From assembly GCA_004431415.1 (NCBI GenBank), contig QPMI01000152.1, forward strand, positions 124,001-188,000: a stretch of 64,000 bases of DNA, given 5' to 3'. Positions 3,437 to 8,257 of the stretch are shown piece by piece (position 1 is the first letter of the stretch; each line of letters starts with the position of its first letter). The notes under the pieces are model-generated. The model had not been told where the DNA came from. It did no database searches and saw only the letters and a list, made by a program, of their open reading frames with translations. A program made the position numbers and the translations under genes. The DNA is from Cyanophora paradoxa CCMP329 (lineage: Eukaryota; Plantae; Glaucophyta).

Positions 3437-5635
3437 CTACTCGTGGCCGCCCTCCGCGTCCGCCCCCTCGGGGAGGGGCCCCAGCCGGAAGTTCACCAGC
3501 GTGCTGCCGCCCGCCCGGGTCAGAGGGGGGGCGAGCCGGCTCGGATCGGATCGGGGCACCTGAGGAAGGCGAAGCCGAGGGAGGCCCAGAGGCAGCTCTC
3601 GAGGCGGTGGGTGTACCCCGACGAGTCGACGATGGCGCCGTACTGGTAGAGCACCCCGGAGAGGAGGGTGCCGATGAGGCGCCCGAAGGCGTTGGCCATG
3701 TAGTAGAAGCCGATGTTCATCGCGGCCTTGTCCTTGTTGCAGTAGGCGAGGATGAGGAAGGAGTGGATGCTGGAGTTGACGGCGAAGAAGACGCAGAAGA
3801 AGGAGAGGCCGACGATGGCGGCGACGGCCGTCCCCGTGAAGTCCGGCGGCTTCACGAAGCGGAAGGAGAGGGAGATGCCGAGCGTCACGAGGGTCAGGAT
3901 GGCCGTCCAGGGGATGAGCTGCCGCCCGCGGCGCATGGGGAGCTGCCCGAGGGGCTTGAGGACGAGCTGCGGGGTCCAGGACTGCACGCCCCCGTAGATC
4001 ATGATCCACACGGCGAGGAACGTCCCCGTCAGCGCGAACGGCCAGTAGAGCTGCGCCGGCGTCGGGCGGGGCGGGCGGGCCGGGGGGAAAGGGGTACAGG
4101 GCACCTCGTTGCGGAGGAAGATGGGGAGGGGGACCTCGAACCAGAGGTCGCGGGCGCCGAAGAGGAAGAAGCGCGCCAGCGAGAGGTAGTTCACGTTCGA
4201 CCCCTTGTTGAAGACCTCTGCGGTCGCGCGGCTGTGAGGCGAGGCGGCGCGCGCCGGTCCGGGAGGGGGCGGGCGGACCGCGGAGGACGATCTTCTTCTT
4301 GGAGCGGCCGAGGTTGTTGGAGACGAAGAAGACGGCGAGGGGCAGGATGAGGACGTTCATGCCGAGCAGCACGCCGAGGGCGCCGTCGAACGTCGCGTAG
4401 GCGAGGAGCAGCGAGCCCCAGAAGTAGCCCAGCCCTTTCACCGCGTTCTTGCACCCTGCCGCCGCCCCCGCTCAGGGCCTTGATCACGAACTGAAAGCCC
4501 CAGCGTTCGAGGCGGGCGGACCGGTGATGTAGGCGACGAGCTTGAAGAGGCCGTTCTTGGAGTCGTCCTTCTTGACGAGCTTCGTGACGGACTTGCCGGA
4601 GAGCTTCACCAGGTCCTTCGCAATCCCCGACCACGCCTGCATGCGAGCCCGGCCCCCGGATCAAATTCAGTTGGATCGAAAGTTTCGAATTTTTGAAGTG
4701 CTCGCCTGGCAGAAGGTAACGTATGCGATGACGCCGACGCGGCCGAAGCCGCCCTCCTCGACGCTCCCGAGGCGCCGCGGGACGGGGTACAGGAGCGCGA
4801 TGCCGAGGATCTGGCAGATGAGGCCCCAGATGAGGAGCCAGCGGAGGCCGACCTTCGAGCCCGCGATGCCCCCTGCGCAGCCGGGATTCGACGGGGGGTA
4901 CGCGGCGCGGGCGGGGGGTGCGGGGCGCACCGAGCAGGTTCGTGAACACCTGCGTTGATCACGCGCACGTGAGCGGCGGCGCGGCGGGGGGGGGCACGGC
5001 CGGGGGAGGGGTGGCGGACCCCCGTGAGCTCGTACATGGAGAACATGATGGCGATGGCGAGGGCGTCGTACTTGGCCTCGTTCAGCTTCAGGAGCACCAC
5101 CATGCGCAGGCTGCTGTCCGTGATGGTGAAGAAGAGGTACCCGAACGCGATCACGTAGCTGCCGCGGCGGGCGCAGCGTCAGCGGCCGCCGCGGCCGCCG
5201 GCGCGGACGCGCGAGGCGGGCGGGCGGCGGGGCGCACAAGTCGGTCATGGATCCCGAGCTACCCGAGGCCTCCTTCTTCTTCTCGGGCGCCGCCTCTGCA
5301 GCCGCGCGAGAAGCCGTCAGCGGCGCTCGACTCGACGGGAGCTACGAGCTTTACGGAGCTCGAACGCAGCGCGCACCAGCGCTCTTCTCGGGTTTGGCGG
5401 CTTCGAGATCTGTCGCCGATCCGTCTGATGCGATGATCTTGGTGCTCGCGAAGGGTCCAGGCGCAAGGCCGAGATCGGCAGCGGGAGCGCCGTTCGCGGG
5501 GGCGTCGTCCTTGACGACCACCTGCAAGTCCATAGCGACGGGAGGCTTGTAAGACTGCTCTTCCAGAACTGGTGCAGCGGCAGTCGGCCGTCCGATCGCA
5601 GGCGCGAGGTATGCGGGCTGCGGCTGCAACTCCAT
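3437..5635 (-). CDS. arsJ: ArsJ-family organoarsenical efflux MFS transporter, with a eukaryotic N-terminal extension (start approximate, may extend upstream)
   Basis: Spliced protein contains FTITDSSLRMVVLL, FSMYELTGVFTNLLGG, GIAKDLVKLSGKSVTKLV, LVAYITGCKNAVKGLGYFWG, VNYLSLARFFLFGARDLWFEVPLP, WIMIYGGVQSWTP and FAVNSSIHSFLI...IGFYYMANAFGRLIGTLLSGVLYQ. These match ArsJ motifs as I recall them (TDGALRML, SGIAKDLNKMSAKS, TGSKNALKG, ARLFLFGARDVWF, FAVNSSLHSYLI, GFYYMANAMGRL). Confidence 0.9.
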
Positions 5636-6449
5636 CTCGCCGCGCTCTTTCTTTGGGTCAACGTTGTATTCGCGCTTCACTTCTGCGGCGCTTCCGAAGT
5701 TGTTGAGGCTTGGCGCACGCTTCTCGCGATGGGAGTCAATCGCAACCTGGCGGCGCGCTCGGCTGGTGCTGGGAATCCTAGGATCGGGACTCGGGAGGCG
5801 CGGACTGCAGATGCTTGCCGACCTGTGGCCGCCGCAGTGAGACCGTCGGACCGAAGGGGGCTCAGCGGCCGAAGACGAATCTCAACAGCCGAATGGGGAA
5901 GGAATGTGGCTGGGGTACGCGTCGCCGACAATAGGCCGCTTCCGGAGGCGCTCCCGCTCTGGATTCGAGGCGGAGGGCCCTGGCATCAAGCCAGAACGTT
6001 GCTTTGATGCTATTATGACGCCTCATACGCGCAAAAGAGCCGCGAAAAGCCTTCCTCTGAACCGGTCTGAACGTTGAATAGGGTTCTTCGACCGACGCTC
6101 CGGGCCCAAATTCTTCTGGGGGAGGCCTGGAATCGATATAACGAACTGCTAGCATGATAACGGACCGCCTTTGATGCGTGGGAAGGCCGGAATCGTGGCG
6201 CGTATTCACGTAGATAGGAGTTTTTTTTCGCGCGTCGACTTTCTTTCCAAGTTCTGGACGCATCTCTAGACTCGCTGGTAGTCCGATTCGAGTTCAGTGA
6301 ACTTCATTTCACTCGAGCAGCCGAGCTCACTCACATCGTCGCGCTTCGGTGAGCTGCTGTAACTGCCGAGCGATGCTTGCATCCGCCGCGGTTCGTGTCT
6401 GACCGAGCGGTCGCAGCGGTCTGCTTTCTCGCACATTCTCGCCGAAAAC

Positions 6450-8257
6450 ATGGTCAAGGTCGCTGTCAACGTGCGTTCCTCGCCGAGCGTCGCTCGGACG
6501 CCGCGTGCTGCGAGTCTGCAACCAGATGACATCGCGGCTGCACATCGCCTTCGAACGGAGGCCATCGCTGACCGCGCCCGCAGGGCTTCGGGCGGATCGG
6601 GCGCCTCGTGACGCGCGCGGCGTTCGGCACCGACAACATCGAGATCGTCCTCATCAACGACCCCCAGTGCGACCCGCGACCCGCGACCCGCTAACCGCGA
6701 CCCGCCGGCCTCGCGCCTTTCGCTCACCGCGAGTCCTCGGCGCGCAGGGGCGGCGCGGCGGCGGCGGCGCACCTGCTGGAGTACGACAGCACGAACGGGA
6801 AGTGGATGGAGGGCAAGATCTCCGTCGACGGCAACACCATCACCGTCGACGGCAAGAAGATTACCTTCACCGAGAAGCGCGGTCCGCCTCGCCGCCCCCG
6901 GCCGGGCGTCCGGCCCTCGGGCCGCCCGGCCTCACGCGGCGCCGGCCGGCAGTGCTCAGCGAGATCCCCCTCAAGGAGCTCGGCGTCGAGATGGTCCTCG
7001 AGTGGTCCGCTCCGTGAACTTCGTGCGATGACCTACCCCGTCGCGGCTCACCGTACCCTCCTTCCTCAGCTCGGGCAAGTTCCTTACGAAGGATGCGCTG
7101 GCGCCCTACTTCACCGCCTGCGGCGTCAAGAAGGTCGTCGTCTCCGCCCCCTGCAAGTTCGAGGGGTACGCCGCGCCGCCCGACCTCCCCCCCCCCCTTA
7201 ACGGCCGGCAGGATGCTGGACTGCGTGTACGGCGTCAACTCGCACCTGTATGACCCCAAGGCGAGCCGGGCCCCGCGGTCTTCAGCCCTTATGCGCCCCC
7301 CGCGGGCCGCTGACGGGTAGGGCCCCGCAGAAGTTCGACATCGTGAGCGCGGCGTCGTGCACGACCAACTGCCTCGCCCCCGTCGTCAAGGCCCGCCCGC
7401 CGCCCCCTTCCCTGCCCCGCCCCCGCCCCCTCCCTGAGGCGCCGCCTCCCTCCGCGCAGGCGATCCACGAGACGCTGAAGATCGTGCACGGCTCGATGAC
7501 GACCATCCACTGCGTGACCAACACGCAGGTCATCGCCGACGCCCCGCACAAGGGTGCGGCCCCGCCCCGGCTTGAGGCTGACGCAAGGCTGACGCGGGGG
7601 CGGGGGCAGACCTGCGGCGGGCGCGGTCGTGCCTGCTCTCGCTGATCCCGACGACGACGGGCTCGGCGACGGCGATTGGGGTCATCTTCCCGGAGCTCAA
7701 GGGCAAGCTCAACGGCCAGGCCATCCGCGTCCCCATGCTCGGCACCTCCTCCCTCGACTGCTGCTTCGAGGCCCGCCGCCGCCGCCGGCCGCCCGGCCCC
7801 CCACGGCTCGGGGCCTGAGGGGGCGGGGGGCGGCAGGTGTCGCGGAAGACGACGGTGGAGGAGGTGAACAGCATCTTCAAGCAGTACTCCGAGGGCCCCC
7901 TCAAGGGTGGGCGCTCCCCTGCACCAGCCCGGCAGGCCGGGCCCCGTGCGCGCCGCCTGACGCCGGGTCTGGCCGCGGGCGGCAGGGATCCTGGGGTACG
8001 AGACGAAGCCGCTGGTGAGCGAGGACTTCAAGAACGACGCCCGCTCCGGCATCGTCGACGCCCTCAGGCGCCCGGCGCCCCCGTCCCCGCCGGCGCCTCG
8101 CCGAGCAGCGACCATGACCGCGACTGACGGGGCGGCGCGCAGCACGATGGTGATCGACGGGACGCAGGTGAAGATCCTGGCGTGGTACGACAACGAGTGG
8201 GGCTACAGCTGCCGCATGGCCGACGTCGCCCGCATGGTCGCCAAGTCCATCGCCTAG
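6450..8257 (+). CDS. gap: Glyceraldehyde-3-phosphate dehydrogenase, ArsJ-associated / cyanobacterial Gap3 type; 12 exons, no targeting peptide
   Basis: MVKVAVN|[26 protein letters not shown], catalytic [66 protein letters not shown]. The TNTQ, RARSC and TTTGSATAI motifs fit the arsJ-linked subfamily rather than glycolytic GapC or plastid GapA. Confidence 0.92.

What the first reader, a model, noticed from the sequence alone, without database searches (positions are those of the whole stretch)
3437..8257. Eukaryotic, intron-rich arsJ + dedicated GAPDH pair: an arsenate-detoxification module in an algal nucleus
Seen: an ArsJ-type MFS gene and a GAPDH of the ArsJ-associated (Gap3) subtype lie head-to-head, about 0.8 kb apart. 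Both have intact motifs and many host-style introns. Established: in bacteria (characterised in Pseudomonas aeruginosa) gapdh-arsJ confers arsenate resistance. GAPDH forms 1-arseno-3-phosphoglycerate, and ArsJ exports it before it hydrolyses. Inference: a bacterial or cyanobacterial operon was transferred long ago and turned into a divergent pair, and the linkage was kept for co-regulation. It would let a phosphate-scavenging alga expel As(V). I recall ArsJ gene neighbourhoods being noted in green algae, so novelty may be limited to this lineage and arrangement.
Basis: partly seen in the sequence, partly recalled or inferred. Interest (0 to 1): 0.9.

Follow-up and report, generated by a model that had tools for sequence, protein, structure and literature searches.

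The report
Glaucophyte arsenate-export gene pair (arsJ-GAPDH3)
The alga Cyanophora paradoxa carries, back to back, the two genes of an arsenate-export system already described in bacteria and green algae, so this is a new lineage for a known system; the mild surprise is that its transporter is closest to those of early-diverging fungi and did not come from the plastid's cyanobacterial ancestor.

Summary
Confirmed. Cyanophora paradoxa has an intact, spliced arsJ (534 aa, 9 introns, - strand) and an ArsJ-type GAPDH (338 aa, 11 coding introns, + strand) head-to-head, 814 nt between the start codons. Transcript contigs show both are spliced. Most likely the GAPDH turns arsenate into 1-arseno-3-phosphoglycerate and ArsJ removes it from the cytosol. 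This is inferred from relatives, not tested here. The module is already published for green algae (PMC7826186), where a Chlamydomonas arsJ mutant is arsenate-sensitive, and the head-to-head layout also occurs in prasinophyte-like and diatom-like contigs. New here: a glaucophyte case, with no PGK-like partner in the window. All eukaryotic ArsJ sampled form one clade (fungi, holozoans, a slime mould, hemichordates, algae). Cyanophora groups with early fungi (99/97), and a cyanobacterial origin of its ArsJ is rejected (AU p=4e-32). The GAPDH is firmly ArsJ-type, but its donor is unresolved, so 'one transferred operon' is not shown. In passing, the fungus Blastocladiella emersonii has an arsM-arsJ-GAPDH3 cluster. 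The scan had no earlier arsenic finding in this genome. Verdict: new member of a known kind, modest interest.

The parts
3437..5635 (-). arsJ CDS span, 534-aa MFS permease (tig00000615_g2563.t1). Exons 5635-5377, 5295-5238, 5158-5020, 4949-4931, 4872-4706, 4636-4522, 4455-4279, 4217-4105, 4050-3560, 3503-3437
   Evidence: identical to P0169; NF033734 391.5 bits over profile positions 2-391/392; AF2 model of residues 100-525 is an all-helical MFS fold, pLDDT 91
5238..5635 (-). Acidic, Pro/Ala-rich N-terminal extension (about 100 aa) of ArsJ, absent in bacteria; not transit-peptide-like
   Evidence: 14 D/E, 35 P/A in the first 100 aa; other eukaryotic ArsJ carry unrelated extensions
5636..5884 (-). 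arsJ 5' untranslated part covered by transcript contigs
   Evidence: table 8 (contigs reach 5881-5884)
5885..6186 (.). About 300-nt gap between the two transcript contigs; candidate bidirectional promoter. No P1BS, PHO-box, TATA or CCAAT match
   Evidence: depth 0 at 5890-6065; GAPDH contig start about 6187 inferred from its length. Contigs cannot show true start sites
6348..6416 (+). 5'UTR intron of the GAPDH gene
   Evidence: joint 6347/6416 in all four runs
6450..8257 (+). ArsJ-associated GAPDH (GAPDH3/Gap3) CDS span, 338 aa, no N-terminal targeting extension. Exons 6450-6470, 6584-6666, 6748-6881, 6953-7004, 7070-7165, 7212-7260, 7331-7390, 7460-7553, 7610-7770, 7837-7906, 7986-8067, 8143-8257
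   Evidence: four of five exons score best to NF033735 or PRK08955; C155, H182, T185, T213, R236, N318 intact; trees
8258..8457 (+). GAPDH 3' untranslated part covered by transcript contigs
   Evidence: table 8

Best explanation
A two-gene arsenate-export module of the ArsJ/GAPDH3 type in the nucleus of Cyanophora paradoxa. Shown: both genes are intact, spliced, transcribed away from a gap of about 300 nt, and belong to the ArsJ and ArsJ-associated GAPDH families. Inferred from characterised relatives: arsenate enters with phosphate; the cytosolic GAPDH3 (no targeting peptide, Asp33 at the NAD site) uses it in place of phosphate and makes 1-arseno-3-phosphoglycerate from glyceraldehyde 3-phosphate; the MFS protein ArsJ, with conserved Lys/Arg residues suited to an anionic substrate, moves this unstable ester out of the cytosol (plasma membrane or vacuole, not determined), where it hydrolyses to arsenate and 3-phosphoglycerate. 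The shared promoter probably co-expresses the two genes (inference).
For: Bacterial mechanism as reviewed in PMC6205960. A Chlamydomonas arsJ mutant is arsenate-sensitive (PMC7826186). 75 of 77 informative bacterial arsJ loci have this GAPDH directly upstream. Cyanophora keeps 91 of 111 columns conserved in bacterial ArsJ, including K221, D222, K225, K229, K255, K259, R327, R334, D335, R473. The GAPDH lies in the ArsJ-type clade at 100/100, scores 530 vs 403 bits on local ars-type vs canonical profiles, and matches 8 of 13 ars-type diagnostic columns. In the fungal group nearest to this ArsJ, Blastocladiella has arsM-arsJ-GAPDH3 side by side, independent context pointing to arsenic.
Against: No assay, no arsenate-induction data and no localisation for Cyanophora. 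ArsJ scores 8.5 bits under the bacterial NCBIfam cut-off. No PGK-like partner or other ars gene lies in the 64-kb window. Several eukaryotes keep arsJ with no GAPDH nearby, so ArsJ may have other uses. Asp183, near-invariant in bacterial ars-type GAPDH, is Cys here.
Confidence: 0.8

Rival explanations
1. The pair now serves carbon or phosphate metabolism. ArsJ moves a phosphorylated C3 metabolite (3-phosphoglycerate or 1,3-bisphosphoglycerate) across a membrane, with GAPDH3 as its supplier, and arsenate handling is incidental.
For: Both genes are transcribed in three samples whose culture conditions are not on record. arsJ is kept in many eukaryotes with no GAPDH next to it. The MFS fold also fits sugar-phosphate carriers (G6PT among the fold hits).
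Against: arsM linkage in Blastocladiella. ars-operon context in bacteria. Arsenate sensitivity of the Chlamydomonas mutant. No transit peptide on either protein.
Confidence: 0.12
2. Evolutionary rival to the single-operon story: the pair was assembled in the eukaryote. A long-resident eukaryotic arsJ was joined by a GAPDH3 from a different source (possibly the cyanobacterial endosymbiont), and selection brought the two genes together independently in several lineages.
For: ArsJ with cyanobacteria is rejected, while GAPDH with cyanobacteria is not (p=0.50). Eukaryotic ArsJ is one clade but eukaryotic GAPDH3 is not recovered as one. Gene order differs among eukaryotes: head-to-head, GAPDH then arsJ, arsJ then GAPDH.
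Against: GAPDH with the green/diatom clade is not rejected either (p=0.28). The GAPDH shares most rare residues with the two blastoclad fungi (5 and 4, against at most 3 for 98 other rows), which matches the ArsJ tree. The GAPDH signal is weak.
Confidence: 0.35
3. Bacterial contaminant or recent unassimilated insertion.
For: The best GAPDH identities are to bacteria, 62-64%.
Against: 20 spliceosomal introns in the coding regions, spliced in RNA contigs. GC3 0.94-0.98. 14 DNA runs of the same organism hold the whole stretch. ArsJ sits in a eukaryote-only clade. Host genes flank the pair.
Confidence: 0.01

Closest known systems
Green-algal ArsJ-GAPDH3-PGK3/PGK4 arsenic-detoxification neighbourhood (Foflonker and Blaby-Haas, PMC7826186)
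   Same: Nuclear, adjacent arsJ and GAPDH3. The head-to-head geometry also occurs in prasinophyte-like contigs.
   Different: Glaucophyte host, which that paper's text and supplements do not mention. No PGK-like gene in the 64-kb window. Both proteins fall outside the strongly supported green/diatom clades, although a sister relationship is not rejected.
Pseudomonas aeruginosa DK2 gapdh-arsJ (Chen et al. 2016, read via PMC6205960); NCBIfam NF033734 and NF033735
   Same: Same two families; conserved catalytic and charged residues; adjacent genes.
   Different: Divergent, intron-rich eukaryotic genes rather than a co-oriented operon. About 100-aa N-terminal extension on ArsJ. About 42% identity to bacterial ArsJ. 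No ArsR or other ars genes nearby.
Eukaryotic GapA/B* GAPDH of diplonemids, haptophytes and diatoms (PMC1920508) and the lone arsJ of Cyanidiales (PMC9812998)
   Same: Bacterial-type GAPDH and ArsJ with patchy eukaryotic distribution; the Phaeodactylum GAPDH found here is NF033735-type.
   Different: Those reports treat the genes singly. Here they are linked, and the Cyanophora GAPDH is outside the diatom/green clade.
Pteris vittata GAPC1-OCT4-GSTF1 system (as described in PMC9454679)
   Same: Same proposed chemistry: GAPDH makes the arsenyl ester and a transporter removes it.
   Different: Built convergently from plant GAPC and OCT4; not homologous to this pair.

Membership tests
Eukaryotic ArsJ clade (includes the Chlamydomonas homologue) | Monophyly with algal ArsJ homologues, apart from bacteria | tested here: met
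   Eukaryote clade 100/100 including Chlamydomonas XP_001702048; whether that accession is Cre07.g354150 was not checked
Eukaryotic ArsJ clade (includes the Chlamydomonas homologue) | MFS fold and conserved ArsJ charged residues | tested here: met
   AF2 pLDDT 91, MFS structure hits; 91/111 conserved columns kept
NCBIfam NF033734 bacterial ArsJ equivalog (strict cut-off) | Whole-protein score of at least 400 bits | tested here: not met
   391.5 bits with full coverage; Chlorella 371 and Micromonas 397 also fall short, so the cut-off is tuned to prokaryotes. Not filed under the strict equivalog
ArsJ-associated GAPDH (GAPDH3/Gap3, NF033735) | Falls in the ArsJ-associated clade, not GapA/GapC | tested here: met
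   100/100 against seven canonical bacterial GAPDHs; local profile 530 vs 403 bits. No eukaryotic GapC or plastid GapA row was in the outgroup
ArsJ-associated GAPDH (GAPDH3/Gap3, NF033735) | Whole-protein NF033735 score of at least 450 bits | not tested
   The joined spliced protein has no reference and was not sent; of five exons, four score best to NF033735 or PRK08955 and one to PRK07729
ArsJ-associated GAPDH (GAPDH3/Gap3, NF033735) | Intact catalytic and phosphate-site residues | tested here: met
   S154, C155, T156, H182, T185, T213, G214, R236, N318
GAPDH-ArsJ arsenate efflux system | gapdh and arsJ adjacent | tested here: met
GAPDH-ArsJ arsenate efflux system | Two-gene-dependent arsenate resistance and efflux | not testable with these tools
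   Needs expression or knock-down assay
Green-algal ArsJ-GAPDH3-PGK neighbourhood | Adjacent PGK3/PGK4-like gene (present in most, not all, green algae) | tested here: not met
   The PGK4-like protein of L011 finds nothing in the 64-kb window (best E 0.84); only about 3.4 kb is visible beyond the arsJ stop
Endosymbiotic (cyanobacterial) gene transfer | Both proteins sister to cyanobacterial homologues | tested here: not met
   ArsJ rejected, p-AU 3.6e-32; GAPDH not rejected, p 0.50

The most novel reading that the evidence does not exclude
The ArsJ-GAPDH3 module is not an algal speciality. It is a very old eukaryotic arsenate-export unit whose transporter entered eukaryotes once, before the fungal/animal and plant lines split (or moved between a glaucophyte and early fungi), and its two genes were kept linked or re-linked in glaucophytes, green algae, diatoms and blastoclad fungi. 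Cyanophora and Blastocladiella would then be tractable tests of a third, little-noticed eukaryotic arsenic defence beside Acr3 and ArsM.
Probability: 0.35. Interest if true: 0.55.

Novelty: new member of a known kind. Interest (0 to 1): 0.3.

Why it matters
It extends a bacterial-type arsenate efflux route to glaucophytes. With green algae (pair) and Cyanidiales red algae (arsJ only), all three primary-plastid lineages now have ArsJ, yet the Cyanophora transporter is not plastid-derived. Relatives in arbuscular mycorrhizal and chytrid fungi, holozoans and hemichordates suggest a wider eukaryotic role in living with arsenate while scavenging phosphate. The mechanism itself is not new.

Tried and rejected
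1) Cyanobacterial/plastid origin of ArsJ: rejected. 2) Congruent Cyanophora+blastoclad grouping in GAPDH: rare residues hint at it, but only 5% of bootstrap trees show it. Without the outgroup the GAPDH joins the green/diatom clade weakly (SH-aLRT 82, quick tree). Unresolved. 3) Intron positions: none shared between Cyanophora arsJ and six other eukaryotic arsJ genes; the GAPDH introns match neither of the two found in Phaeodactylum. Uninformative. 4) PGK-like, ArsM and other bacterial ars-neighbour genes against the window: only a helicase and an ArsA/GET3 ATPase hit; the latter reads as an ordinary eukaryotic GET3. 5) Promoter motifs (P1BS, PHO box, TATA, CCAAT): none. 6) No other glaucophyte or red-algal sequence was identifiable among the hits. 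7) The L074 row was mis-spliced and was corrected from then on. 8) Chen et al. 2016 (PMC4992400) is not held, so the bacterial mechanism is cited through reviews. 9) Literature searches for Cyanophora+arsJ and Blastocladiella+arsenic found nothing relevant. Searches were frame slips, corrected and resent.
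Full report
Observation. The window holds two intact genes facing away from each other. On the minus strand, ten exons from 5635 to 3437 give a 534-aa membrane protein. On the plus strand, twelve exons from 6450 to 8257 give a 338-aa GAPDH. All introns are short GT-AG or GC-AG introns, and the start codons are 814 nt apart. 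Contigs of four probable RNA runs from three samples skip all 11 GAPDH coding introns and a further 5'UTR intron. They show four arsJ introns directly, and piece lengths fit the other five. They leave an uncovered gap of about 300 nt between the two transcripts; contigs cannot show true start sites or expression levels. Fourteen DNA runs of the same organism hold the whole stretch, though any of them may be the source of this assembly.

Organism. Earlier notes of this scan named the genome as Cyanophora paradoxa. I checked this: protein P0169 is identical over all 534 residues to my model and is EukProt EP00741_Cyanophora_paradoxa_P002642, gene tig00000615_g2563.t1. The host is a glaucophyte.

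How the spliced models were handled. The GAPDH was searched exon by exon by reference. One reference in that call (3562-4215) is a genomic stretch of two arsJ exons with their in-frame intron. Full-length ArsJ searches used the tool-supplied id P0169. The whole-protein NCBIfam score of the GAPDH was therefore left out. I did join exons inside scripts, from window and locus coordinates, and used those models for local alignments, local BLAST/HMM comparisons with files already fetched, and trees.

Family identity. P0169 matches NF033734 (ArsJ) over the whole profile at 391.5 bits, just under the prokaryote cut-off of 400. Green-algal homologues score 371-397. It keeps 91 of 111 columns conserved in bacterial ArsJ, among them the Lys/Arg/Asp set, and folds as an MFS carrier. 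The GAPDH has all catalytic residues, 8 of 13 ars-type diagnostic residues and no targeting peptide. It falls in the ArsJ-associated clade at 100/100 against seven canonical bacterial GAPDHs. In bacteria, 75 of 77 informative arsJ loci have this GAPDH directly upstream.

Mechanism. In Pseudomonas aeruginosa, GAPDH is proposed to form 1-arseno-3-phosphoglycerate, which ArsJ extrudes (PMC6205960). In Chlamydomonas an arsJ insertion mutant is arsenate-sensitive (PMC7826186). I infer the same for Cyanophora (0.8). Gene integrity, splicing, family membership and adjacency are shown. Substrate, membrane and co-regulation are inferred. Independent context comes from the fungal group closest to this ArsJ: Blastocladiella emersonii has an arsenite-methyltransferase gene head-to-head with arsJ, followed at once by an ArsJ-type GAPDH, and Paraphysoderma has GAPDH then arsJ.

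What is known. Foflonker and Blaby-Haas described ArsJ-GAPDH3-PGK neighbourhoods in green algae and proposed bacterial transfer of GAPDH and ArsJ as a unit. Cho et al. report arsJ alone in Cyanidiales and say its tree is monophyletic with green and other eukaryotic lineages; their tree figure is not held as text, and since Cyanophora was in their genome set it may already appear there. A bacterial-type GAPDH in diatoms, haptophytes and diplonemids was noted in 2007. I found no paper on the pair in a glaucophyte. The head-to-head layout is not special: it occurs in two prasinophyte-like contigs with PGK, a diatom-like contig and an unidentified eukaryote. Cyanophora lacks a PGK-like neighbour in this window.

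Origin. The closest ArsJ relatives are glomeromycete and chytrid fungi at about 50-52% identity, against 43-47% for green algae and 41-47% for bacterial-type hits. In the careful tree all eukaryotic ArsJ form one clade (100/100): fungi, Capsaspora, Syssomonas, Chromosphaera, a dictyostelid, hemichordates and algae. Cyanophora groups with fungi (99/97). Green algae, diatom-like sequences and hemichordates form a separate clade (100/100). Holding Cyanophora ArsJ with cyanobacteria is rejected (p 3.6e-32); holding it with the green clade is not (p 0.094). The ArsJ tree is rooted on bacteria by assumption, and red algae and other glaucophytes are missing. The GAPDH is unplaced: basal with the outgroup, weakly beside the green/diatom clade without it, and compatible with green/diatom (p 0.28) or cyanobacterial (p 0.50) sisters. 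It shares the most rare residues with the two blastoclad GAPDHs, but only 5% of bootstrap trees join them. No arsJ intron position is shared with fungi. Linkage is patchy: no GAPDH lies within the flanks held for arsJ of Ptychodera, Capsaspora, Allomyces, Geranomyces, Gigaspora or Pedinophyceae, and no arsJ lies within 6 kb of the Phaeodactylum GAPDH3.

Verdict. A real, expressed ArsJ-GAPDH3 pair: a new member of a known kind, with a modest evolutionary twist. Interest 0.3. The most novel reading left open is an ancient or eukaryote-to-eukaryote shared module (probability 0.35, interest 0.55). No step had to be referred.

Noticed in passing
L181:8667-12807 (Blastocladiella emersonii, JANHCV010000006.1): Compact fungal arsenic cluster: arsenite methyltransferase arsM (-) head-to-head with arsJ (+), followed by an ArsJ-type GAPDH (+). 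No paper found.
   Followed up: partly
L002:7119-10554 (Paraphysoderma sedebokerense): ArsJ-type GAPDH directly upstream of arsJ in tandem; a second arsJ copy lies on another contig.
   Followed up: partly
L001:10001-11590 (Ptychodera flava chromosome): Intronless ArsJ in hemichordates (also Saccoglossus, Glandiceps) nests inside the green-algal/diatom-like clade at 100/100, suggesting alga-to-animal transfer; no GAPDH within 10 kb.
   Followed up: partly
P0159-P0166, P0407-P0421: ArsJ homologues are widespread in arbuscular mycorrhizal and chytrid fungi, mostly unannotated; the two loci checked have no GAPDH nearby.
   Followed up: partly
L179:1139-4921 (ENA metagenome contig): Unidentified eukaryote with a divergent ArsJ-type GAPDH head-to-head with arsJ, 1.2 kb apart; its ArsJ is in a clade with Chrysoparadoxa.
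   Followed up: partly
L074:3370-6593: Diatom-like contig with GAPDH3 and arsJ head-to-head (255 nt). It shares a Cys/Met PLP-enzyme-like neighbour with the Phaeodactylum locus L177, where no arsJ was found within 6 kb.
   Followed up: partly
window 40840-42278 (-): ArsA-family ATPase, by sequence an ordinary eukaryotic GET3/TRC40 with a C-terminal CxxC; 33 kb from the pair and probably unrelated to it.
   Followed up: partly
window 1846-3140 (+) and about 690-1800 (-): Immediate neighbours: a TIGR01777-like NAD-dependent epimerase (DUF1731 hit) tail-to-tail with arsJ, and a probable DNL zinc-finger gene (read by eye) head-to-head with the epimerase. Divergent pairs are not rare here.
   Followed up: no
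window 9394-12300 (-): Kinase-like gene (weak Pkinase hit) with a long Ala-rich C-terminal part, downstream of the GAPDH.
   Followed up: no
window 20291-21974 (-): Helicase gene (Helicase_C).
   Followed up: no
window 8560-8850: Low-complexity stretch rich in short palindromes (atcatgat, gccatggc) with a 20-nt tandem duplication at about 8741-8775; may be a decayed repeat.
   Followed up: no
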